From Caecitellus pseudoparvulus (taxonomy: Eukaryota > Protista > Bigyra: Bicosoecida), in contig CBFFRQ010000081.1 in assembly GCA_965644315.1 (NCBI GenBank), forward strand, positions 372,001-436,000: DNA of 64,000 bases, read 5' to 3'. Shown here piece by piece: positions 5,101 through 18,196 of the stretch. Numbering within the stretch: position 1 is the first letter of the stretch; each line of letters opens with the position of its first letter. The notes beneath the pieces are model-generated. The model did no database searches. It saw only the letters and a program-made list of their open reading frames with translations, and was not told the origin of the DNA. A program made the translations under genes and the position numbers.

Positions 5101-6108
5101 GTGAAGCTGAGACCGTACGAGTCCGGTGCCGCAGGCAGTGGCCCCCCGGCACTGCAGGGCGGCGCCGCAATGGCGCCCCTTGCCCCAGGGGAGGTGGAGC
5201 CGTTGTCCCGAGAGGGGGCGGTGGGTGTGCGCATCCTGCGCGACATTTCGTCACCCACCTCGGGCGTGGCCAGTGCTGACGGCAGCAGTCCCCAGGCACG
5301 CCAACAAGGCGTCGGAGTCACCATGGTTGGCAGTCGGGGCGTGGACGGGGAGGGCTACGCCTCCACGGCACCTGTGGCGCCCACCGAAGAGTGGACCCCC
5401 GCCAGCACCCGCCTGCAGAGCAACACGTCCCTGGCACAGTACGCCGCACAGGGCGACGGGCGGCGCCCAGGAGACAGCTCCCCAGCATCCGGCACCACAC
5501 AGCGCCCCTTCGCAGGCATGCTGACAGGGCGGGCACTGCCACCTGTGCCAGTGGACGCGTCGGGCGCCCCCCCTGTGCCCCCCCGACACACAGCCCCCAC
5601 ACCAGCACCAGCGACCACTGATGGCGCCGACACACCCCCGCCAGTGCCGGCACGGCGTCGAGGTGGCGGCGCCCCCCCAACACAGCAGCAAGGCTTGACC
5701 GCAAGCCAAGTGAAGGAGATCCGTGCGCTGAAGGAGCTGGAGGACTCACACACCACGCCAGACGGCGCCGTGAACGTCCGGGCTCTGGTGGGCAAGTGGG
5801 CGGGTGGCGGCGGCGGTGCCTCACGGGCTGTGAGGGTGAAACGCACCAGTGGAGTGGGCATGCTCCCCAGCATGGTGTCTGACGCCAAGGCCACCCAAGG
5901 CCCCATCTCCAGCTCCAAGCGCCCCTCCTGGATGGCCATGCGCAAGGGCGGAGGTGCCAGCCTGGCAGGCAGCAGTGACGCCACGACAAGTGCCAGGGCC
6001 GGCGGGGGCGTCACTCCCACACGCCCGCCTCGGCGCAGCAAGGTGGGCGCTGCGCAGGGCGCCAAGGTGAGTGCGCTGCTGGCGAAGTTCGAGGGCGCGA
6101 AGCGGTAA
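2185..6108 (+). CDS. FGD/frabin-like RhoGEF (DH-PH-FYVE plus two WW domains and a Pro-rich tail)
   Basis: Exons with phase-consistent GT-AG introns: 2185-2241, 2370-2498, 2672-2792, 2863-3006, 3073-3363, 3432-3960, 4047-6108. DH motifs EILSSEQSYV and FLIMPVQRVPRYRLLLKELL; PH motifs KEGTLFK..FYLFNDILLY and AEWRSAI; FYVE WEVDSE..CRLC..RKHHCRNCG..VCNACS..RVCTSC; WW motifs LPDNW..GRVYYFN..TAWEPP and LPSPW. Confidence 0.9.
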
Positions 6109-6472
6109 GCAGCCTGGAGCTTGCACCGTGGGGCGCGTGGGGACAATGCAGTGATTGGGCGGGTGTCAGGTCGTGCATGGGGCTGGGCGGTGGAGGTGGT
6201 GGCGAGGGGGGGCGCCACGGCGTGGGTGGCACTGTACGCGTCATGGGTCATGTGCCTGAGCTGTGGGCAAGGAGGAGTGAGGTCCAGGCTGTCACGCAGC
6301 TTCGCAGGTGCGACATTGAGGCGGCTGTGTCAAAATGAACGCCCTCCTTCACCTCGTTGCACTAAATAGTGGAAGCCAGCTTGTTGTGTGCTTCTGTGCT
6401 GTGCCACTTTTGCTGTTGTGCAGTTGAGTTGGTTGGCGAAAGCAGTTGCGCCATTTGCAACACCACCACGCC

Positions 6473-8434
6473 ATGGCTGCTGAGGTCGACAAGCAGACAG
6501 GAGCGCGGCGATGGCAGGCCGCCTGTGATGCTGAGCAGCCAGATGTACTGCTGAGCATGCTGGAGGGGCGTGGCGATGGTGTGGGTGCGGAGGCGGGGAG
6601 GTTGTCGAGTGCTGAGGCAACCGCTGGCTTTGTTGTTGCTTGCAAAGCAGGGCATGTTGGCTTATTGCGTGGATTGCTCGGGTTGGAGGGTGATCAAGCT
6701 GTGGATGTGCACGCTGGAGATGAAAGTGGTCCTGAGGCTGGCTTCCGACATGCCTGTCGCAACGGGCGCATTGATGTGGTGCGAGAGCTGCTGACTCTGA
6801 CGGGTGCTCGTGAGGTGGATGTGCATGCTGGACCTGAGGGTGAGCCTGAGTACGGCTTCCAGGCTGCCTGTTGCTATGGTCATGTAGATGTTGTGAGGGA
6901 GCTGCTGACTTTGACCGGGCATCGTGAGGTGGATGTGCATGCTGGGCCTGATGGCAAACTTGAGGATGGGTTCCAATGGGCTTGTCAGAATGGGCACATT
7001 GATGTGGTGCGAGAGCTGCTGGCATTGACTGGTGCTCGAGAGGTGGATGTGCATGCTGGACCTGAGGGTGAGCCTGAGGCTGGCTTCAGACTTGCTTGTC
7101 AGAGCGGACACCTTGATGTTGTGCGAGAGCTGCTGGCGCTGGGCGGGCATCGCGAGGTGGATGTGCACGCTGGGCCTGAGGGCAAGCCTGAGACTGGCTT
7201 CAGACTTGCTTGTCAGAACGGGCACCTTGATGTGGTGCGAGAGCTGCTGGCGCTGAGCGGGCATCGTGAGGTGGATGTGCATGCTGGAGATCCGAACAGT
7301 CCTGAGGCTGCCTTCCAGCTTGCTTGTCAGAACGGGCACATTGACGTGGTGCGCGAGCTGCTGGCACTGACGGGGCATCGTGAGATAGATGTGCATGCTG
7401 GGCCTGAGGGCGAGCGTGAGTATGGCTTCCGACTTGCCTGTGAGCATGGGCACATTGATGTGGTCCGTGAGCTGCTGGCGCTGACTGGTGCTCGAGAGGT
7501 GGATGTACATGCTGGGCCTGAGGGCAAGCCTGAGGCCGGCTTCAGACTTGCTTGTCAGAACGGGCACATTGATGTGGTGCGAGAGCTGCTGGCGCTGAGC
7601 GGGCATCGTGAGGTGGATGTACATGCTGGGCCTGAGGGCAAGCCTGAGGCTGGCTTCAGACTTGCTTGTCGCTTTGGGCACCTTGATGTTGTGCGAGAGC
7701 TGCTGGCGCTGACTGGTGCTCGGGAGGTGGATGTACATGCTGGGCCTGAGGGCAAGCCTGAGGCTGGCTTCAGACTTGCTTGTCAGAACGGGCACCTTGA
7801 TGTAGTGCGAGAGCTGCTGGCGCTGAGCGGGCATCGTGAGGTGGATGTACATGCTGGGCCTAAGGGCTGGCCTGAGGCTTGCTTCCGACTTGCCTGCGAG
7901 TATGGCCACATTGATGTGGTGCGAGAGCTGCTGGCGCTGGACGGGCAACGTGAGGTGGATGTGCATGCTGAAGATCCGAACGGTCCTGAGGCTGCCTTTC
8001 AACTTGCCTGTCAGAATGGGCACATTGATGTAGTTCGAGAGCTGCTGAAGCTGACTGGTGCACGTGAGGTTGATGTTCATGCTGGGCCTGAGGGCTGGCC
8101 TGAGGCTGCCTTCCTGGCCGCTTGTTGGAAGGGGCATTTGGATGTGCTGCGGGAGCTTTTGGCATTGAGCGGGCATCGTGAGGTGGATGTGCATGCTGGG
8201 CCTGAGGGCACACCTGAGTTTGGCTTCGTGGCCGCTTGTTGGACGGGGCATTTGGATGTGCTGCGGGAGCTGCTAGGCCTCACTGGCCATCGGGCCATCC
8301 CCCTGCACACACGACTCGCAGCGGGAACAGCAGCTGTGCAACCTGCCAAAGATGCCGCCTGGCACGGCACCAGCACTCGACGTGGGCGGCGTACCATGGT
8401 GCTGCTGCGTGCTGGCCGGACAGCAAGGAAGTGA
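6473..8434 (+). CDS. Ankyrin-like repeat protein ANK-1 (653 aa, 15 units of 38 aa), intronless
   Basis: ATG in the ccacgccATGg context shared by all four copies. Unit consensus AGFRLACQNGHIDVVRELLALTGHREVDVHAGPEGKPE matches the ankyrin A-x-x-G-H..VV..LL pattern with an insertion. Confidence 0.9.
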   Translation: MAAEVDKQTGARRWQAACDAEQPDVLLSMLEGRGDGVGAEAGRLSSAEATAGFVVACKAGHVGLLRGLLGLEGDQAVDVHAGDESGPEAGFRHACRNGRIDVVRELLTLTGAREVDVHAGPEGEPEYGFQAACCYGHVDVVRELLTLTGHREVDVHAGPDGKLEDGFQWACQNGHIDVVRELLALTGAREVDVHAGPEGEPEAGFRLACQSGHLDVVRELLALGGHREVDVHAGPEGKPETGFRLACQNGHLDVVRELLALSGHREVDVHAGDPNSPEAAFQLACQNGHIDVVRELLALTGHREIDVHAGPEGEREYGFRLACEHGHIDVVRELLALTGAREVDVHAGPEGKPEAGFRLACQNGHIDVVRELLALSGHREVDVHAGPEGKPEAGFRLACRFGHLDVVRELLALTGAREVDVHAGPEGKPEAGFRLACQNGHLDVVRELLALSGHREVDVHAGPKGWPEACFRLACEYGHIDVVRELLALDGQREVDVHAEDPNGPEAAFQLACQNGHIDVVRELLKLTGAREVDVHAGPEGWPEAAFLAACWKGHLDVLRELLALSGHREVDVHAGPEGTPEFGFVAACWTGHLDVLRELLGLTGHRAIPLHTRLAAGTAAVQPAKDAAWHGTSTRRGRRTMVLLRAGRTARK

Positions 8435-8612
8435 CAGCAACTGTAGGCCGACTCAGTCCTGGCGTCTCCAGCTGGGAAGGCTCCACGCTGTGAGTGAGTG
8501 AGGCGACACAGGTGAGGGCTCCACGTGACACTGCTCCCATCGCATCGACCAGACACGGTGCAGGCGCGCGCACTGTGCTGCGGGCTTGGACTGGGTCGTG
8601 CTCTTGGACGAC

Positions 8613-8698
8613 ACCCCCCACGACAGCCTCGATGGTGGGTGACCCTGCTTCCAACGCGTCGACTGCGTGCGGCAGCCGCGGTATCATCAGCTCAGTCT
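8613..8698 (-). pseudogene. Diverged remnant of the start of the CSN6 last exon
   Basis: The minus strand reads IPRLPHAVDALEAGSPTIEAVVG versus CSN6 IPVPYKVDALEAESLTIEAVVG. Confidence 0.75.
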
Positions 8699-8699
8699 G

Positions 8700-9269
8700 A
8701 TGGGCAGTGTGGGGGATGCGTCTGGCGCCCCCCCTGTGCCCCCCCGACACACAGCCCCCACACCAGCACCAGCGACCACTGACGGCGCCGACACACCCCC
8801 GCCAGTGCCGGCACGGCGTCGAGGTGGCGGCGCCCCCCCAACACAGCAGCAAGGCTTGACCGCCAGCCAAGTGAAGGAGATCCGTGCGCTGAAGGAGCTG
8901 GAGGACTCACACACCACGCCAGACGGCGCCGTGAACGTCCGGGCTCTGGTGGGCAAGTGGGCGGGTGGCGACGGCGGTGCCTCACGGGCTGTGAGGGTGA
9001 AACGCACCAGTGGAGTGGGCATGCTCCCCAGCATGGTGTCCGACGCCAAGGCCACCCAAGGCCCCATCTCCAGCTCCAAGCGCCCCTCCTGGATGGCCAT
9101 GCGCAAGGGCGGAGGTGCCAGCCTGGCAGGCAGCAGTGACGCCTCGACAGGTGCCAGGGCCGGTGGGGGCGTCACTCCCACACGCCCGCCCCGGCGCAGC
9201 AAGGTGGGCGCTGCGCAGGGCGCCAAGGTGAGCGCGCTGCTGGCGAAGTTCGAGGGCGCGAAGCGGTAA
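8700..9269 (+). pseudogene. Duplicated 3' fragment of the RhoGEF last exon (open frame with a junction-derived ATG; pseudogene or mini-gene)
   Basis: Near-identical to about 5551-6108. Similarity continues into the 3' flank to about 9396. In-frame ATG at 8700. Confidence 0.8.
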
Positions 9270-9614
9270 GCAGCCTGGAGCTTGCACCGTGGGGCGCGTG
9301 GGGACAATGCAGTGATTGGGCGGGTGGCTGGTCGTGCATGGGGCTGGACGGTGGAGTTTGTGGCGAGGGGGGGGCGCCACGGCGTGGGTGGCACTGCACG
9401 TGTCAGCTGCGTTTCGGGACTTGTGACCCAGGTAGCAATGCAGCCTTGACAGGTGTCACACTGTCATGTCCCGGTCAAAGTCAATACCGATGCCTGCATC
9501 GTACACCTCTTGTGTACATTGACCAGCACATGCCCTTGCTGTACCGCCTGTGCCTCTGTGCCGGGGGTGTTGCTTTGTGAACGTGGCAGGTGCGGAATCA
9601 GGGTCCACCACGCC

Positions 9615-11069
9615 ATGGCTGCTGAGGTCGACAAGCAGGCAGTAGCGCGGCGATGGCAGGCCGCCTGTGATGCTGAGCAGCCAGGTGTACTGCTGAGCAT
9701 GCTGGATGGGCGTGGCGGTGGTGTGGGTGCGGAGGCGGGTGGGTTGTCGAGTACTGACACCACTGCTGGCTTTGTTGTTGCTTGCAAAACAGGGCATGTT
9801 GGCTTGCTGCGTCGATTGCTCGCATTGGAGGGTGATCAAGCCGTGGATGTGCATGCTGAGGATCGGCATGGGCCTGAGGCTGGCTTCCGATACGCCTGCT
9901 GCTGTGGCCATCTTGACGTGGTGCGAGAGCTACTGGCGCTGAGCGGGCATCGCGAGGTGGATGTACATGGAAGGGTAAACGGCATTCCTGAGGGCGGTTT
10001 CTTTCTTGCCTGCCAAAATGGCCATCTTGGTGCGGTGCGAGAGCTGCTGGCCTTGACTGGTGCTCGTGAGGTGGATGTGCATGCTGGGCGTGTTGGTGAG
10101 CCTGAGATTAGCTTTCGGCTTGCCTGTCGCAACGGGCATGTTGGCGTGGTGCTTGAACTGCTGGCATTGAGCGGGCATCGCGAGGTAGACGTGCATGCTG
10201 GGCGTGAGGGCGAACCCGAGAATGGCTTCCACCTTGCCTGTGAAAGGGGGCATACTGATGTGGTTGTTGAGCTGCTGAAGCTGACTGGTGCTCGTGAGGT
10301 GGATGTACATGCTGGGCCTGACGGTGATCCTGAGGCAGGTTTCCAGCTTGCCTGCCAGAACGGTCATGTCGAGGTTGTACGTGAACTGCTGGCGCTGACT
10401 GGGCACCGTGAGGTGGATGTACATGCTGGACCTGAGGGTAAGCCTGAGTACGGCTTCCGACTTGCCTGTCAGAATGGTCAGGCGGGTGTGGTGCGGGAGC
10501 TGCTGGCATTGAGCGGGCATCGTGAAGTGGACGTGCATGCTGGGTCTGATGGTGTGTCGGAGGCTGGCTTTCAGCTTGCGTGCCGCAATGGGCACTCTGA
10601 TGTCGTGCGAGAGCTGCTGGCGCTGACCGGTGCTCGAGAGGTGGATGTGCATGTGTCGGTTGTGGGCATTCCCGAAGCTGGATTCCGATCAGCCTGTCGC
10701 TTTGGGCATGTCGAAGTGGTGCGAGAGCTGCTGGCGCTGACTGGGCATCGCGAGGTGGACGTGCATGCTGGGCCTGAGAGCAATCCTGATGCCGGCTTCC
10801 GGGTGGCCTGTCGCTTTGGGCATGTCGAAGTGGTGCGAGAGTTGCTGGGCCTCACCGGTCATCGGGCCATCCCCCTGCACACACGACTTGCAGCGGGAAC
10901 AGCAGCTGTGCAACCTGCCAAAGATGCCGCCTGGCACGGCACCAGCACTCGATGTAGTCGTGCGGCCATGGTGCTACTGCTGGCTGACCAGGAGGGAAGG
11001 AAGCGACCGCGACCACAGGCCGGCTCACTCCTGGCGTCTCCAGCTGGGAAGGCTCCACGCTGCGAGTGA
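9615..11069 (+). CDS. Ankyrin-like repeat protein ANK-2 (484 aa, 10 units), intronless
   Basis: Same N-terminal leader and C-terminal cap as ANK-1, with the most divergent repeats. The stop seen in the paralogues (aggaagTGA) is CGA here, which extends the tail. Confidence 0.9.
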   Translation: MAAEVDKQAVARRWQAACDAEQPGVLLSMLDGRGGGVGAEAGGLSSTDTTAGFVVACKTGHVGLLRRLLALEGDQAVDVHAEDRHGPEAGFRYACCCGHLDVVRELLALSGHREVDVHGRVNGIPEGGFFLACQNGHLGAVRELLALTGAREVDVHAGRVGEPEISFRLACRNGHVGVVLELLALSGHREVDVHAGREGEPENGFHLACERGHTDVVVELLKLTGAREVDVHAGPDGDPEAGFQLACQNGHVEVVRELLALTGHREVDVHAGPEGKPEYGFRLACQNGQAGVVRELLALSGHREVDVHAGSDGVSEAGFQLACRNGHSDVVRELLALTGAREVDVHVSVVGIPEAGFRSACRFGHVEVVRELLALTGHREVDVHAGPESNPDAGFRVACRFGHVEVVRELLGLTGHRAIPLHTRLAAGTAAVQPAKDAAWHGTSTRCSRAAMVLLLADQEGRKRPRPQAGSLLASPAGKAPRCE

Positions 11070-11536
11070 GTGAGGCGACACAGGTGAGGGCTCCACGTGA
11101 CTTTCGTCCCGTCGCAATGAAATCCCACAGTGTGTGCATGAGCGCTGTGCTGATGGGGGTTGAGTGGCCGCGTGAGCCTTGCGACCATGGGGGCTTGGGC
11201 TGGGCCGTGCGCTTGGTCGGCGGGCAGCGTGGCTGCTGCGCTGAACATGCGCCAAAGCTGCGGCGATGCAGCAACTGACACAACGAGGGCTTCACAGCAA
11301 TACCACACAACGCCACACTGAGCCGATGCCGGGGCGGGTGCCTGTGTCGTGGTCGGTGGGCGGCGTAGGTCCTGGGCGGCAACGAGAGTCAAGGCCGGAC
11401 TGGATCGGCCCCCAACTGCGGTGTGCTGCACACCAAGTGCCCCACTGCAGGCGCCTCCGCATGCGACCTGCACAAACAATGCAGTGACTGGGCGCTTGCC
11501 GCCGAGGGCAGGACACGATCAGTGCATTGCCAGACG

Positions 11537-11995
11537 TCAGTGAAACGCCGACGGCCCACCCGACGCCAACCTCGCCGCACTGCTCGACTGCAACGCCAGC
11601 CCTAGCTTGTCAAATGCTGTGTTAGCCGTGTCCACAGCCCTCGTCATGGCTGATAGCATGGCGATGACCTGGCTGTCTGTCACCTCCTCTGTGAACGCTG
11701 TGTGGAAGGCGGCGCTGTCTGCCGCCGGCAGCTGGTTCCCCACCGCCCTGCACAGGCGCAGCAACTCCCGGTCGCCCTCCACGCGCCCCTCCTTCACCGC
11801 CCGCACATACTCCCGCACGATGTGCATGCGCTCACGTGCGATGCGTACCGCCTTCAGGGAGCCTTCCAGGTGGGGGTTCACGTCGGAGTCAGTCTCCCCG
11901 CGGCGCTGCCCTGCCCCCACGACGGCCTCGATAGTGAGTGACTCTGCCTCTAGTGCATCGATTATGTGCAGCAGCAGCCGCAAGCACGACTCGGC
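11537..11995 (-). pseudogene. Duplicated last exon of CSN6 with its 3' flank (11383-11536)
   Basis: Near-identical to 16953-17370. Only the first dozen or so codons are diverged (AESCLRLLLHII vs AESWIPVPYKV). The CAG acceptor is retained at 11996-11998, and the upstream exons are absent. Confidence 0.85.
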
Positions 11996-12000
11996 CTGGC

Positions 12001-12781
12001 GGGCAGTCGGGGCGTGGACGGGGAGGGCTACGCCTCCACGGCACCTGTGGCGCCCACCGAAGAGTGGACCCCCGCCAGCACCCGCCTGCAGAGCAACACG
12101 TCCCTGGCACAGTACGCCGCACAGGGCGACGGGCGGCGCCCAGGAGACAGCTCCCCAGCATCCGGCACCACACAGCGCCCCTTCGCAGGCATGCTGACAG
12201 GGCGGGCACTGCCACCTGTGCCAGTGGACGCGTCGGGCGCCCCCCCTGTGCCCCCCCGACACACAGCCCCCACACCAGCACCAGCGACCACTGATGGCGC
12301 CGACACACCCCCGCCAGTGCCGGCACGGCGTCGAGGTGGCGGCGCCCCCCCAACACAGCAGCAAGGCTTGACCGCCAGCCAAGTGAAGGAGATCCGTGCG
12401 CTGAAGGAGCTGGAGGACTCACACACCACGCCAGACGGTGCCGTGAACGTCCGGGCTCTGGTGGGCAAGTGGGCGGGTGGCGGCGGCGGTGCCTCACGGG
12501 CTGTGAGGGTGAAACGCACCAGTGGAGTGGGCATGCTCCCCAGCATGGTGTCTGACGCCAAGGCCGCCCAAGGCCCCATCTCCAGCTCCAAGCGCCCCTC
12601 CTGGATGGCCATGCGCAAGGGCGGGGGTGCCAGCCTGGCAGGCAGCAGTGACGCCTCGACAGGTGCCAGGGCCGGCGGGGGCGTCACTCCTACACGCCCG
12701 CCTCGGCGCAGCAAGGTGGGCACTGCGCAGGGCGCCAAGGTGAGCGCGCTGCTGGCGAAGTTCGAGGGCGCGAAGCGGTAA
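12001..12781 (+). pseudogene. Duplicated 3' fragment of the RhoGEF last exon (longest copy, frame open)
   Basis: Near-identical to 5329-6108. The 3' flank matches to about 12950. First in-frame ATG at 12191. Confidence 0.85.
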
Positions 12782-13134
12782 GCAGCCTGGAGCTTGCACC
12801 GTGGGGCGCGTGGGGACAATGCAGTGATTGGGCGGGTGTCAGGTCGTGCATGGGGCTGGGCGGTGGCGAGGGGGGGCGCCACGGCGTGGGTGGCACTGTA
12901 CGCGTCATGGGTCATGTGCCTGAGCTGTGGGCAAGGAGGAGTGAGGTCCAGCCTGTGCTGCTGCTTTGGCAGGTGCGACATACTCATGGCTGAGACAATA
13001 TCAACGCTCCCTTCACCTTGTTACACTTAATATAGGAACTTAGCTTCTTGTGCGATTCTGTGCTGTGCCACTTGTGCTGTTGTGCAGGTGGGTTGGTTGG
13101 CGAGAGTGGATGCGGAATCTGGCTCCACCACGCC

Positions 13135-13956
13135 ATGGCTGCTGAGGTCGACAAGCAGGCAGTTGTGGGGCAATGGCGGGCAGCCTGTGCTGCTAGGAAG
13201 CCAGATGTACTGCTGAGCATGCTGGAGGGGCGTGGCGGTGGTGTGGGTGCGGAGGTGGGAGAGTTGTCGAGTGCTGATACCACTGCTGGCTTTGTGGTTG
13301 CTTGCAAAACAGGGCATGTTGGCTTGCTGAGTCGATTGCTCGCATTGGAGGGTGATCAAGCCGTGGATGTGCACGCCGAGGATCGGTATGATCCTGAGGT
13401 TGGCTTTCGACATGCCTGTCGCAACGGGCACATTGATGTGGTGCGAGAGCTGCTGGCGCTGACTGGTGCTCGAGAGGTGGATGTACATGCTGGGCCTGAG
13501 GGCAGTCCTGAGTATGCCTTCGTAGTTGCTTGTCAGAAAGGACACATTGATGTGGTACGCGAGCTGCTGTCTTTGACTGGTGCTCGTGAGGTGGATGTAC
13601 ATGCTGGGCCTAAGGGCTGGCCTGAGGCTGCCTTCCTGGCCGCTTGTTGGAAGGGGCATTTGGATGTGCTGCGGGAGCTTTTGGCATTGAGCGGGCATCG
13701 TGAGGTGGATGTGCATGCTGGGCCTGAGGGCACACCTGAGTTTGGCTTCGTGGCCGCTTGTTGGACGGGGCATTTGGATGTGCTGCGGGAGCTGCTAGGC
13801 CTCACTGGCCATCGGGCCATCCCCCTGCACACACGCCTTGCAGCGGGAACAGCAGCTGTGCAACCTGCCAAAGATGCCGCCTGGCACGGCACCAGCACTC
13901 GACATGGGCGGCGTACCATGGTGCTGCTGCGTGCTGGCCGGACAGCAAGGAAGTGA
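13135..13956 (+). CDS. Ankyrin-like repeat protein ANK-3 (273 aa, 5 units), intronless
   Basis: The N-terminal part is nearly identical to ANK-4. The last two units, tail and downstream flank are nearly identical to ANK-1. Confidence 0.9.
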   Translation: MAAEVDKQAVVGQWRAACAARKPDVLLSMLEGRGGGVGAEVGELSSADTTAGFVVACKTGHVGLLSRLLALEGDQAVDVHAEDRYDPEVGFRHACRNGHIDVVRELLALTGAREVDVHAGPEGSPEYAFVVACQKGHIDVVRELLSLTGAREVDVHAGPKGWPEAAFLAACWKGHLDVLRELLALSGHREVDVHAGPEGTPEFGFVAACWTGHLDVLRELLGLTGHRAIPLHTRLAAGTAAVQPAKDAAWHGTSTRHGRRTMVLLRAGRTARK

Positions 13957-14134
13957 CAGCAACTGTAGGCCGACTCAGTCCTGGCGTCTCCAGCTAGGAA
14001 GGCTCCACGCTGTGAGTGAGTGAGGCGACTCAGGTGAGGGCTCCACGTGACACTGCTCCCATCGCATCGACCAGACACGGTGCAGTCGCGCGCACTGTGC
14101 TGCGGGCTTGGACTGGGTCGTGCTCTTGGACGAC

Positions 14135-14220
14135 ACCCCCCACGACAGCCTCGATGGTGGGTGACCCTGCCTCCAACGCGTCGACTGCGTGCGGCAGCCG
14201 CGGTATCATCAGCTCAGTCT
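14135..14220 (-). pseudogene. Second copy of the diverged CSN6 exon remnant
   Basis: Almost identical to 8613-8698 (offset 5522). Confidence 0.75.
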
Positions 14221-14221
14221 G

Positions 14222-14791
14222 ATGGGCAGTGTGGGGGATGCGTCTGGCGCCCCCCCTGTGCCCCCCCGACACACAGCCCCCACACCAGCACCAGCGACCA
14301 CTGATGGCGCCGACACACCCCCGCCAGTGCCGGCACGGCGTCGAGGTGGCGGCGCCCCCCCAACACAGCAGCAAGGCTTGACCGCCAGCCAAGTGAAGGA
14401 GATCCGTGCGCTGAAGGAGCTGGAGGACTCACACACCACGCCAGACGGCGCCGTGAACGTCCGGGCTCTGGTGGGCAAGTGGGCGGGTGGCGGCGGCGGT
14501 GCCTCACGGGCTGTGAGGGTGAAACGCACCAGTGGAGTGGGCATGCTCCCCAGCATGGTGTCCGACGCCAAGGCCGCCCAAGGCCCCATCTCCAGCTCCA
14601 AGCGCCCCTCCTGGATGGCCATGCGCAAGGGCGGAGGTGCCAGCCTGGCAGGCAGCAGTGACGCCACGACAGGTGCCAGGGCCGGCGGGGGCGTCACTCC
14701 CACACGCCCGCCTCGGCGCAGCAAGGTGGGCACTGCGCAGGGCGCCAAGGTGAGCGCGCTGCTGGCGAAGTTCGAGGGCGCGAAGCGGTAA
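14222..14791 (+). pseudogene. Duplicated 3' fragment of the RhoGEF last exon (open frame, junction ATG)
   Basis: Near-identical to 8700-9269 and 5551-6108. The flank matches to about 14970. Confidence 0.8.
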
Positions 14792-15156
14792 GCAGCCTGG
14801 AGCTTGCACCGTGGGGCGTGTGGGGACAATACAGTGATTGGGCGGGTGGCTGGTCGTGCATGGGGCTGGGCGGTGGAGGTGGTGGCGAGGGGGGGCGCCA
14901 CGGCGTGGGTGGCACTGTACGCGTCATGGGTCATGTGCCTGAGCTGTGGGCAAGGAGGCGTGAGGTCCAGGCTGTGCTGCTGCTTTGGCAGGCGGGACAT
15001 ACTCGTGGCTGAGACAATATCAACACCCCCCTTCACCTCACTGCACTTGGGATTGGAACCCAGCTTGTTGTGTGCTTCTTTGCTGTGCCACTTGTGCTGT
15101 TGTGCAGGTGGGTTGGTTGGCGAAAGCAGTTGCGCCATTTGCAACACCACCACGCC

Positions 15157-16778
15157 ATGGCTGCTGACAGCGACAGGCAGGCAGTGGTGGCAGGATGGCG
15201 GGCAGCCTGTGCTGCTAGGAAGCCAGATGTACTGCTGAGCATGCTGGAGGGGCGTGGCGGTGGTGTGGGTGCGGAGGCGGGTGGGTTGTCGAGTGGTCAC
15301 ACAACTGCTGGCTTTGTGGTTGCTTGCCAAACAGGGCATGTTGGCTTGCTGAGTCGATTGCTCGCATTGGAGGGTGATCAAGCCGTGGATGTGCACGCCG
15401 AGGATCGGTATGATCCTGAGGTTGGCTTTCGACACGCCTGTCGCAACGGGCACATTGATGTGGTGCGGGAGCTGCTGGCGCTGAGTGGGCATCGCGAGGT
15501 GGATGTACATGCTGGCCCGATGGATAAGTCGGAGGATGGATTTCGAGCTGCCTGCGAAGAAGGACACGTTGATGTGGTACGGGAGCTGCTGTTGCTGAGT
15601 GGACATCGGGAGGTGGATGTGCATGCTGGACTGATGGCAAGCCTGAGGCTGGCTTCAGACACGCTTGTCATTTCGGGCACATTGACGTGGTGCGAGAGCT
15701 GCTGGCTCTGACAGGGCATCGTGAGGTAGATGTGCATGCGGGGCCTGAGGGTGGGCCTGAGGCTTGCTTCCGAGCTGCCTGTCAGAACGGGCACCAGGAT
15801 GTGGTGCGAGAGCTGCTGGCTCTGACAGGGCATCGTGAGGTGGATGTGCATGCTGGAGATCCGAACGGTCCTGAGGCTGGCTTCCAGCTTGCTTGTCAGA
15901 ATGGCCACATTGGTGTGGTGCGGGAGCTGCTGGGGCTGAGCGGGCATCGTGAGGTGGATGTGCATGCTGGAGATCCGAACGGTCCTGAGGCTGCCTTCCA
16001 GCTTGCTTGTCAGAATGGCCACATTGATGTGGTGCGAGAGCTGCTGGCTCTGACAGGGCATCGTGAGGTGGATGTGCATGCTGGAGATCCGAACAGTCCT
16101 GAGGCTGCCTTCCAGCTTGCTTGTCAGAACGGGCACATTGGTGTGGTGCGGGAGCTGCTGGCTCTGACAGGGCATCGTGAGGTGGATGTGCATGCTGGAG
16201 ATCCGAACGGTCCTGAGGCTGCCTTCCAGCTTGCTTGTCAGAATGGCCACATTGGTGTGGTGCGAGAGCTGCTGGCTCTGACAGGGCATCGTGAGGTGGA
16301 TGTGCATGCTGGAGATCCGAACGGTCCTGAGGCTGCCTTCCAGCTTGCTTGTCAGAATGGCCACATTGGTGTGGTGCGAGAGCTGCTGGCTCTGACAGGG
16401 CATCGTGAGGTGGATGTGCATGCTGGAGATCCGAACGGTCCTGAGGCTGCCTTCCAGCTTGCTTGTCAGAATGGGCACATTGATGTGGTGCGAGAGCTGC
16501 TGGCGCTGACCGGGTATCGTGAGGTAGACGTGCATGCTGCTGACAGGTGGGGTGAGCCTGATGATGTCTTCCGGCACGCCTGTCGCTTTACACAGGTGAA
16601 TGTCGTGCGTGAGCTGCTAGGCCTCACTGGCCATCGGGCCATCCCCTTGCACACACGACTTGCAGCGGGAGAGACTGCTGTGCAACCTGCCAAGGATGCC
16701 GCCTGGCACGGCACCAGCACTCGACGTGGGCGGCGTGGCATGCTGCTGCTGTGGGCTGACCAGGAGAGACGGAAGTGA
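15157..16778 (+). pseudogene. Ankyrin-like repeat gene ANK-4 (12 units) with a 1-bp frameshift
   Basis: Split into ORFs 15157-15711 and 15687-16778. At 15628-15635 the sequence is ggactgat where the repeat pattern predicts ggacctgat (GPDGKPE). This is either a pseudogene or a sequencing error. Confidence 0.8.
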
Positions 16779-16952
16779 CAGCGACCACGGTCTGGCTTCG
16801 AGAGTCAAGGCCGGACTGGATCGGCCCCCAACTGCGGTGTGCTGCACACCAAGTGCCCCACTGCAGGCGCCTCCGCATGCGACCTGCACAAACAATGCAG
16901 TGACTGGGCGCTTGCCGCCGAGGGCAGGACACGATCTGTGCATTGCCAGACG

Positions 16953-18196
16953 TCAGTGAAACGCCGACGGCCCACCCGACGCCAACCTCGCCGCACTGCT
17001 CGACTGCAACGCCAGCCCTAGCTTGTCAAATGCTGTGTTAGCCGTGTCCACAGCCCTCGTCATGGCTGATAGCATGGCGATGACCTGGCTGTCTGTCACT
17101 TCCTCTGTGAACGCCGTGTGGAAGGCGGCGCTGTCTGCCGCCGGCAACTGGTTCCCCACCGCCCTGCATAGGCGCAGCAACTCCCGGTCACCCTCCACGC
17201 GCCCCTCCTTCACCGCCCGCACATACTCCCGCACGATGTGCATGCGCTCACGTGCGATGCGTACCGCCTTCAGGGAGCCTTCCAGGTGGGGGTTCACGTC
17301 GGAGTCAGTCTCCCCGCGGCGCTGCCCTGCCCCCACGACGGCCTCGATAGTGAGTGACTCTGCCTCCAGTGCGTCAACCTTGTACGGCACCGGGATCCAC
17401 GACTCAGCCTGGTGCGCGGTTGGGGAACGGGTGTGTGGGAAGGCACGTTGGCAGGTTTCGTGTGCAGTGCCCACGCACCCCAGACACGAACTCCGACATG
17501 AACAACGCAATGGGCAGGTCCTTGGCAGTATCCACTGTGGCAGGTGCAGCGTCCAGGCACAGGAACAGGGGCGCCTCTGTCATTGCCTTGACCTGCGAGA
17601 AAGGAGGAGGAGCACAGGCGTGGGAGGGATGGCCAGGCAAGGCGAAGCTGCTGCCGGCGCACCTGGGAGTGGAAGGCGAAGTCTTCTTCCGAGGGCCTTC
17701 CGTTGGGGCAGACAGCATACCATCCAAGCACTTCGTAGGTTGGGTACACATCAGCGACTGCGACGGCGTGGGCGTCGAGGGTGCCGCGCAGCGGTTTGGC
17801 GTGGTGCGGAGCGGCGGTTCTGCCTGCTGCCATGAGGCCGGCGCGCCTCACCGATTTCCACGTGTTTCTTGGTCAGAGGCAAGTTGAACCCCGCCTTGCC
17901 TTCCTCCAGGCTCACCAGTGAGTCTGCTGTGAGGATGATGTCCACGCTGTCCTCGCTCTGCGTGCCAAACAACACGCCAGCTGCCCGGGTGTGGCCTGGA
18001 GCCTGCCCTGCCTGCAGCCGTGTGTGGTGATCTGCCACGCCCAGCAGCGCCATCTGTGGTGCAAGGAAGGCAGCGAGGTGCGTTGGATGCCTGGTTGCCG
18101 CTGGCGGGGTGCTGCACGCACAGGGTGCAAGGACACAGCCTGGGCTGTGCCTGCTGCGCCAGTGTCGTCCGGTGACACTTTGCTCTCGCTTGCCAT
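16953..18196 (-). CDS. COPS6: COP9 signalosome subunit 6 (MPN domain)
   Basis: Exons 18196-18122, 18053-17852, 17757-17663, 17592-17479, 17408-16953. Motifs VSLHPMALLGVADHHTR, GVLFGTQ, VYPTYEVLGWY, DLPIALFMSE, HLEGSLKAVR, LLRLCRAVGNQLPA. Confidence 0.85.

What the first reader, a model, noticed from the sequence alone, without database searches (positions are those of the whole stretch)
6620..16640. Repeat variation is focused on the predicted ankyrin binding surface, like a natural DARPin library
Seen across about 42 units: the frame F-x-x-A-C-x-x-G-H-x-D-V-V-R-E-L-L-x-L-x-G-x-R-E-V-D-V-H-A is nearly fixed. Variation falls in the loop (GPEGK, GDPNG, GPKGW, RVNGI, SVVGI, GPMDK, EDRYD), the residue after PE (A/Y/D/T/F/G/I/N/V), the pair after F (RL, QA, QW, LA, VA, FL, HL, RY, RS, RV) and the pair after AC (QN, CY, EH, RF, EY, WK, WT, CC, ER, QK, EE, HF). 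Established: the beta-turn and helix-1 positions form the ankyrin binding groove and are the ones randomised in DARPins. Inference: diversifying selection on target recognition.
Basis: partly seen in the sequence, partly recalled or inferred. Interest (0 to 1): 0.82.

Follow-up and report, generated by a model that had tools for sequence, protein, structure and literature searches.

The report
Variable-surface 38-residue ankyrin gene family
Four neighbouring genes of an unnamed marine protist belong to a family of at least 150 genes built on a rigid 38-residue ankyrin repeat; its predicted binding face varies freely, but mostly at about the neutral rate, and only a few sites show positive selection.

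Summary
The window carries 42 units of 114 nt (38 aa) in four tandem paralogues of 15, 10, 5 and 12 units. About 20 positions are fixed. Variation is concentrated at unit positions 3, 6, 7, 10, 11 (one face of helix 1) and 34-38 (loop tip).

Pfam, an AlphaFold model (pLDDT 85) and Foldseek matches to DARPins (TM about 0.8) confirm an ankyrin solenoid. Five of the six DARPin-randomised positions map onto the nine most variable positions (p = 0.0014).

The inference of diversifying selection is only partly supported.
- The scaffold is under strong purifying selection (omega 0.01-0.1) although its silent sites are heavily diverged.
- In the window's units the fast class has omega 0.94, and M8 is no better than M7.
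- Family-wide, site omegas at the variable positions are 0.55-1.5.
- Sixteen five-unit paralogues do show a small positively selected class (3-9% of sites, omega 2-4.5; p about 5e-6 with segment-specific trees). Within the repeats it lies only at these surface positions.

The family has at least 150 genes in a 30.6 Mb genome, all sharing a conserved C-terminal tail of unknown function. This scan has noted the same 38-residue ankyrin theme on other DNA of this genome. Ligands and function are untested.

The parts
6473..8434 (+). Paralogue G1: N-terminal cap helices, 15 units of 38 aa (array 6617-8326), conserved tail from 8291; 653 aa, intact
   Evidence: Pfam Ank_2 E 1e-75
9615..11069 (+). Paralogue G2: 10 units (array 9759-10898), tail from 10863 with a longer C-terminal extension; 484 aa, intact
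   Evidence: Pfam Ank_2 E 2e-33
13135..13956 (+). Paralogue G3: 5 units (array 13279-13848), tail from 13813; 273 aa, intact. This is the protein that was modelled.
15157..16778 (+). Paralogue G4: 12 units (array 15301-16670), tail from 16635. The frame shifts by one base in the loop near 15630, and there is one extra codon between the units at 16440 and 16557. Units 6-11 are nearly identical.
   Evidence: reads inconclusive on the frameshift
6617..16670 (+). The 42 units of 114 nt. In each unit, positions 3-11 form helix 1, 12-13 the G-H turn, 14-21 helix 2, and 25-27 a short 3-10 turn; 28-38 plus 1-2 of the next unit form the long loop. Variable surface: 3, 6, 7, 10, 11 and 34-38.
8291..8434 (+). 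Conserved C-terminal tail (about 47 aa, starts with the RAIPL motif). Equivalent tails lie at 10863-11069, 13813-13956 and 16635-16778. No known family matches.

Best explanation
These are four members of a very large, lineage-specific family of stand-alone ankyrin-repeat proteins. Each has an N-terminal cap, 4 to more than 40 copies of a non-canonical 38-residue repeat, and a conserved tail of about 47 residues.

Shown:
- The repeat scaffold (core of both helices, the G-H turn, the REVDVHA stretch of the loop, and the outer face of helix 2) is held by strong purifying selection.
- Ten positions per repeat, on the groove-facing side of helix 1 and at the loop tip, change at roughly the neutral rate. 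A few of them (chiefly 3, 10, 35 and 38) show bursts of positive selection.
- Diversity arises by ordinary point mutation together with unit duplication and recombination in tandem arrays. No dedicated diversification machinery is seen.

Inferred:
- Each paralogue presents a different concave binding surface, so the family is a germline repertoire of protein binders.
- The invariant tail and outer face connect all members to something common, such as a partner or a location.
For: Ankyrin identity:
- Pfam Ank_2 at 250.8 bits against a cutoff of 27.3.
- AF2 model with pLDDT 85.2 and pTM 0.80.
- Foldseek matches to DARPins at TMt 0.76-0.85, rmsd 2.6-3.0, and to FEM1B/C.

Surface mapping:
- HMMER alignment to the consensus ankyrin 1N0R gives the register.
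- On helix 1 the entropy moment is 0.59, with positions 3, 6, 7, 10, 11 on one face and invariant F5, A8, C9 on the other.
- Five of six DARPin positions are among the top nine entropies (p = 0.0014).

Purifying selection rather than homogenisation:
- Silent-site divergence at invariant codons is high (pS 0.9-1.1 at F5, C9, H13; overall 0.42).
- Framework omega is 0.04-0.10 and 0.008-0.19.

Near-neutral surface:
- M3 fast class omega 0.94 at 27% of sites; M8 not better than M7.
- Site-wise omega 0.55-1.5 in two independent sets of 120 units.

Subset under positive selection:
- 16 paralogues: M2a over M1a p = 7e-4, M8 over M7 p = 2e-6.
- With six segment-specific trees p = 5e-6, 3% of sites at omega 4.5. 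Within repeats, 3.83 of 4.01 of the posterior mass lies on the surface class.
- Three null simulations gave LRT at or below 0.
- Branch-mixture LRTs of 34/54, 19/21 and 21/29 at positions 3, 10 and 35, against a simulated null maximum of 7.3.
- The array in locus L022 shows position 3 at omega 5 (p = 0.04).

Family size and tail:
- All 150 tails scored (of 1158 candidates) match without internal stops.
- The full protein gives 234 or more matches.
- The same architecture occurs in metagenomic relatives.

Recombination:
- Flanks of the paralogues are 95-98% identical while collinear internal units differ at pS 0.19-0.48.
- Segment-specific trees raise lnL by about 355.
Against: - No ligand, expression level or localisation is known.
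- The only RNA hint is a pair of exact short contigs in a library labelled metatranscriptomic, which the tool itself rates as probably DNA.
- Burial and exposure were inferred from helical periodicity and homology, not computed from coordinates, because the tools do not return coordinates.
- The positive-selection signals rest on my own implementation of the codon models. It was validated only by reproducing IQ-TREE's M0 likelihood.
- Those signals could be inflated by recombination within segments, multi-nucleotide changes or alignment error. Three of the eight best sites lie in the poorly modelled tail.
- In the window's own units no omega above 1 is detectable.
Confidence: 0.55

Rival explanations
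1. Pervasive diversifying selection. The family would be an arms-race recognition repertoire, for instance against viruses or other non-self, with the whole variable face driven by positive selection.
For: The variable sites lie at canonical binding positions. Gene-level M2a and M8 tests are significant. Branch-wise bursts replicate in both family sets. The family is expanded in tandem to at least 150 genes. Mean posterior omega is 1.1-1.5 at positions 7, 10, 11, 14, 35 and 38 in the five-unit paralogues.
Against: Average omega of the surface class is not above 1 in any unit-level analysis: 0.94, 0.79 with CI 0.70-0.90, and 0.87-1.21 uncorrected in collinear blocks. No site exceeds 1 in both family sets. 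Only 3-9% of sites fall in the positive class. The closest unit pairs show no excess of replacements.
Confidence: 0.2
2. Relaxed constraint only. The groove-side positions are simply free of structural constraint and drift; the variation has no role in recognition, and the positive-selection signals are artefacts of recombination and multi-nucleotide changes.
For: Omega is about 1 in the window's units, with no gain from M2a or M8. Recombination is evident. Hypervariation at these positions is generic to ankyrin repeats (PMC1261162).
Against: Exposed outer-face positions 15, 18, 19 and 22 are constrained (omega 0.02-0.33), so exposure alone does not free a site. Composition at the variable sites is far from a mutational expectation (N, Q, K, H, Y, E and D enriched 2- to 15-fold; V, C and S depleted). 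The LRTs survive segment-specific trees and null simulations. At least 150 tail matches contain no internal stop codons.
Confidence: 0.2
3. Artefact of concerted evolution. The 'fixed frame' would reflect recent homogenisation of repeats by gene conversion rather than selection, with the variable sites being what conversion has not yet erased.
For: Gene 4 holds six nearly identical units. The flanks of the paralogues are 95-98% identical.
Against: Silent sites inside the invariant codons are strongly diverged (overall pS 0.42, up to 0.9-1.1). Tree length is 13 substitutions per codon over 34 units. The same frame is kept in metagenomic relatives at 50-68% identity.
Confidence: 0.03

Closest known systems
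Designed ankyrin repeat proteins (DARPins)
   Same: Same fold (Foldseek TMt 0.76-0.85, rmsd 2.6-3.0 A). Both have a fixed scaffold with variation at the loop tip and the end of helix 1. The positions equivalent to 33, 2, 3, 13 and 14 are among the most variable here.
   Different: This family is natural and germline-encoded. Its period is 38 residues, not 33. The TPLH motif is replaced by x-G-F-x-x. The position-5 equivalent is an invariant Glu. Extra variable positions (equivalents of 1, 6, 9, 10 and an inserted residue) give about 10 variable sites per repeat instead of 6. There are 4 to more than 40 repeats and a conserved non-ankyrin tail.
Canonical ankyrin repeats (Pfam Ank, Ank_2), as analysed by Magliery and Regan 2005 (PMC1261162)
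   Same: Helix-turn-helix-loop repeats whose most variable positions (2, 3, 5, 13, 14, 17, 32, 33) mark the ligand-binding surface. Position 14 here (canonical 17) is also variable.
   Different: That pattern was seen across unrelated ankyrin proteins. Here it is seen within one young, tandemly expanded paralogue family with an otherwise almost invariant repeat.
Ankyrin substrate receptors with a C-terminal adaptor box (FEM1B/C, ASB SOCS-box proteins, poxvirus ANK/PRANC)
   Same: An ankyrin array followed by a short conserved C-terminal element. FEM1B/C are the best sequence and fold matches among natural proteins.
   Different: The tail matches no Pfam family, including SOCS-box, F-box and PRANC, and the Atlas feature search gave nothing above 0.89. 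An adaptor role is only an analogy.
Germline repertoires of repeat-based recognition proteins (highly variable plant NLR LRRs, PMC8226289; lamprey VLRs)
   Same: A rigid solenoid scaffold, variation focused on the concave face, and tandem arrays evolving by birth and death.
   Different: Ankyrin rather than LRR. No signalling domain in these four genes. No somatic assembly. Average omega at the surface is about 1 rather than clearly above 1.
Other 38-residue ankyrin gene sets noted by this scan in the same genome (ANK-only 'binder' family; helical domain plus pseudokinase plus ankyrin arrays)
   Same: The same 38-residue unit and the same variable positions, according to those notes. Long ANK-only relatives were confirmed here in loci L010, L022 and L029.
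   Different: The four genes here carry no kinase-like or other domain. Those notes report surface sites evolving faster than silent sites; that is not reproduced for this window's units.

Membership tests
Ankyrin repeat (Pfam clan Ank) | Significant match to the Ank / Ank_2 profile HMMs | tested here: met
   Ank_2 scores 250.8, 115.2, 65.6 and 186.2 bits for the four genes against a cutoff of 27.3
Ankyrin repeat (Pfam clan Ank) | Helix-turn-helix-loop units stacked into a solenoid | tested here: met
   AF2 model pLDDT 85.2 with two helices per unit; Foldseek probability 1.00 to DARPins, FEM1 and AnkB
Ankyrin repeat (Pfam clan Ank) | 33-residue period | tested here: not met
   Period is 114 nt, or 38 aa. 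The five extra residues lie after helix 2 and in the loop (alignment to 1N0R)
Ankyrin repeat (Pfam clan Ank) | TPLH motif at the start of helix 1 and G-H turn between the helices | tested here: inconclusive
   The G-H turn is kept (G12 34/34, H13 32/34). TPLH is absent; its place is taken by variable-G/A-F-variable
DARPin-like binder library | Variation confined to positions 2, 3, 5, 13, 14 and 33 on a fixed scaffold | tested here: inconclusive
   Five of six equivalents are among the nine most variable positions (p = 0.0014). The position-5 equivalent is invariant, and five further positions vary
Repertoire under diversifying selection | dN/dS above 1 at the binding-surface sites | tested here: inconclusive
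   Window units: omega 0.94, M7 against M8 p = 0.62. Sixteen paralogues: 3-9% of sites at omega 1.9-4.5, p from 7e-4 to 2e-6
Cullin-RING substrate receptor with ankyrin array (SOCS-box, F-box, PRANC) | Recognisable adaptor box C-terminal to the repeats | tested here: not met
   No Pfam hit for seven tails even at E up to 10

The most novel reading that the evidence does not exclude
The family, at least 150 and perhaps several hundred genes in a 30.6 Mb genome, is a germline-encoded recognition repertoire of a unicellular marine eukaryote. Each array would read a different non-self or cellular target with its variable groove, and the invariant tail and outer face would couple all members to one common effector or location. 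This would be an ankyrin-based counterpart of LRR receptor repertoires.
Probability: 0.15. Interest if true: 0.8.

Novelty: new variant of a known kind. Interest (0 to 1): 0.5.

Why it matters
If the variable groove does bind diverse targets, this would be a natural experiment in ankyrin binder design. It has a longer repeat, no TPLH motif, about ten variable positions per repeat and hundreds of solved 'solutions'. It would also hint that small marine protists keep large germline repertoires of recognition proteins. The measured result is a caution: a library-like pattern of variation on a repeat scaffold arises here mostly at the neutral rate, so the pattern alone does not show an arms race.

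Tried and rejected
Family analyses therefore rest on 30 loci plus the window.
- Laying public runs on 13000-15800 gave only short contigs swamped by paralogues. It could not settle the gene 4 frameshift, expression, or strain polymorphism.
- Counting-based (Nei-Gojobori) dN/dS on nearest unit pairs is biased both ways: within-class dS is inflated by multi-hit codons, and framework dS is deflated by the way pairs were picked. I therefore relied on likelihood models.
- Collinear unit comparisons between paralogues are not orthologous, because the flanks are much younger than the arrays.
- The tail matched nothing in Pfam or in the Atlas feature search.
- Three literature searches found no description of this family.
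- A housekeeping gene in the window (coatomer beta') has its best named hits in stramenopiles at only about 55% identity. The organism is left unplaced.
- The large representative-protein search was not used, because no claim here rests on the absence of relatives.
Full report
**What is there.**
The stretch holds four + strand genes in a segmental tandem duplication (self-BLAST):
- G1: 6473-8434
- G2: 9615-11069
- G3: 13135-13956
- G4: 15157-16778

Each gene starts with two cap helices and runs through 15, 10, 5 or 12 units of exactly 114 nt (38 aa). Each ends in a conserved tail of about 47 residues that begins with RAIPL. An HMM built from the units finds 42 in the window and none outside this stretch. 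G4 is one base short in a loop near 15630, so its frame shifts, and it has one extra codon before its last unit. Public contigs neither confirm nor refute that missing base.

**Check of the observation.**
Units are numbered from the P of the PE motif. Among 34 internal units, 14 positions are invariant and 6 more are at least 32/34. Amino-acid entropy is concentrated at positions 3, 6, 7, 10, 11, 14 and 35-38. Rate differences among sites are overwhelming: M0 -1861.6, M1a -1745.9, M3 with three classes -1733.9. My M0 likelihood equals IQ-TREE's, which validates the code. The same pattern holds in 334 units taken from 30 other loci of the genome.

**Is it ankyrin, and are the variable sites on the binding face?**
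- Pfam Ank_2 scores 65-251 bits against a cutoff of 27.3.
- An AlphaFold2 model of G3 has pLDDT 85.2 and pTM 0.80.
- Foldseek matches DARPins at TM about 0.8 and rmsd about 2.7 A, and also matches FEM1B/C.
- In each unit, positions 3-11 form helix 1, 12-13 the G-H turn and 14-21 helix 2. The rest is a long loop.
- The HMMER alignment to the consensus ankyrin 1N0R places the five extra residues after helix 2 and in the loop. It maps positions 34, 36, 37, 10 and 11 here to canonical 33, 2, 3, 13 and 14.
- Those five of the six DARPin-randomised positions lie among the nine most variable of 38 (hypergeometric p = 0.0014). The sixth, canonical 5, is an invariant Glu here.
- The equivalents of canonical 1, 6, 9 and 10 and one inserted residue also vary. 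The TPLH motif is gone.
- On helix 1 the variable residues (3, 6, 7, 10, 11) occupy one face and the invariant F5, A8, C9 the opposite face (entropy moment 0.59).
- The exposed outer face of helix 2 (15, 18, 19, 22) is conserved (omega 0.02-0.33). Exposure alone therefore does not explain the variation.

Coordinates are not returned by the tools. Burial was therefore inferred, not computed.

Variation at canonical 2, 3, 5, 13, 14, 17, 32 and 33 is a general property of 15,497 ankyrin repeats (PMC1261162). The pattern is therefore expected of any ankyrin family with diverse partners.

**Selection.**
The scaffold is not merely homogenised. Silent sites inside invariant codons are strongly diverged (pS up to 0.9-1.1, overall 0.42), and framework omega is 0.008-0.19.

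For the variable class the results depend on the data set.

Window units:
- The fast class holds 27% of sites at omega 0.94.
- M1a and M2a are identical.
- M7 -1732.90 against M8 -1732.43 gives p = 0.62.

Independent nearest unit pairs across the family (140 pairs):
- Omega is 0.79 (0.70-0.90) for the ten surface positions and 0.10 for the framework.
- The highest single position is 38, at 1.37 (1.02-1.78).
- These counts are biased in both directions, as explained under 'tried and rejected'.

Site-wise likelihood on two independent sets of 120 units:
- Omega is 0.55-1.5 at the variable sites.
- No site is above 1 in both sets.

**Signals of positive selection at a minority of sites.**
- A branch-mixture (MEME-like) test gives LRTs of 34/54 at position 3, 19/21 at position 10, 21/29 at position 35 and 16/11 at position 7 in the two family sets. 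In the window the maximum is 9.6.
- Simulations under omega at or below 1, with the tree re-inferred each time, gave a maximum of 7.3 in 33 site-replicates.
- Sixteen paralogues with the same five-unit architecture as G3 (256 aligned codons) give M2a over M1a p = 7e-4 and M8 over M7 p = 2e-6, with 9% of sites at omega 1.9.
- Allowing a separate tree for each of six segments raises the likelihood by about 355 units, which is itself evidence of recombination. It leaves M2a over M1a at p = 5e-6, with 3% of sites at omega 4.5.
- Three null simulations through the same pipeline gave no gain.
- The sites with posterior above 0.5 are unit positions 10 (twice), 34 and 38, one N-terminal loop residue and three tail residues. 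Within the repeats, 3.83 of 4.01 of the posterior mass lies on the ten surface positions.
- A young array in locus L022 gives position 3 at omega 5 (p = 0.04).

Recombination within segments, multi-nucleotide changes and alignment error in the tail remain possible inflators.

**Context.**
- The genome is 30.6 Mb in 215 contigs.
- The full protein finds 234 or more matches.
- All 150 scored tails, out of 1158 candidates, match without internal stops. The family therefore has at least 150 genes, many in tandem arrays and on short contigs.
- Members range from 4 to more than 40 units and are ANK-only.
- The only relatives in the large protein collection are unnamed proteins on metagenome contigs, at 68% identity or less, with the same cap, unit and tail.
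- Words from the locus occur in marine metagenomes and in libraries labelled metatranscriptomic.
- A coatomer beta' gene in the window is about 55% identical to its best named relatives, which are stramenopiles. That does not place the organism.
- The flanks of the four paralogues are 95-98% identical, while collinear internal units differ at pS 0.19-0.48. Arrays and flanks therefore have different histories.
- Composition at the variable sites is enriched in N, Q, K, H, Y, E and D and depleted in V, C and S relative to a crude mutational expectation. This fits an exposed functional surface rather than free drift.

**Verdict.**
'Diversifying selection' is supported only for a small subset of sites, and only at family level. 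Most of the surface variation is statistically indistinguishable from neutral change on a strongly constrained scaffold.

The family is an uncharacterised, massively expanded variant of the ankyrin repeat with a conserved tail of unknown role. Earlier notes of this scan describe the same 38-residue theme elsewhere in this genome, including fusions to a kinase-like domain, and report faster-than-silent surface change. I confirmed the ANK-only relatives but did not reproduce omega above 1 for this window.

Noticed in passing
window 15600-15660 and 16548-16556: Gene 4 is one base short in the loop after its third unit (near 15630), which shifts the frame. There is also one extra codon before its last unit. 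One contig from the likely source run carries an extra G at 15630 (92 of 318 depth), but paralogues cannot be excluded.
   Followed up: partly
window 5329-6470, 8435-9405, 12002-13125, 13957-14926, 14236-15150: The flanks of the four paralogues are 95-98% identical, while the repeat arrays between them differ at silent-site distances of 0.19-0.48. The flanks include open copies of the 3' end of the upstream FYVE/WW gene (ORFs 8667-9269, 11966-12781, 14189-14791).
   Followed up: partly
window 11383-11956 and 16799-17372 (minus-strand ORFs 11537-12382, 16953-17510): Two 98.8% identical copies of a minus-strand gene fragment lie downstream of G2 and G4. They are part of the duplicated block.
   Followed up: no
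window 6000-16800: Four-fold degenerate third positions of these genes are G 50%, T 25%, C 14.5%, A 10.7%. This strong strand asymmetry matches the GC skew of +0.28 at 6-8 kb.
   Followed up: no
window 6446-6475, 13108-13137, 15130-15159; alignment A1 columns 40-52: The roughly 10 codons upstream of the start ATG (reading ...HHA-M-A) are conserved among the paralogues and in metagenomic relatives. This suggests a conserved 5' leader or start context.
   Followed up: no
G3 residues 239, 260, 269 (window about 13849-13941): Three of the eight sites assigned to the positively selected class lie in the C-terminal tail. Two of them (260, 269) lie in the stretch with pLDDT below 50; 239 lies just before it. 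This could be real or an alignment effect.
   Followed up: no
L022 1462-3633 (genome contig C54, about 236.8-238.9 kb): A very long ANK-only relative (open frame 1867 aa) is built from a few unit types repeated in a regular alternating order. This points to recent multi-unit duplications.
   Followed up: partly
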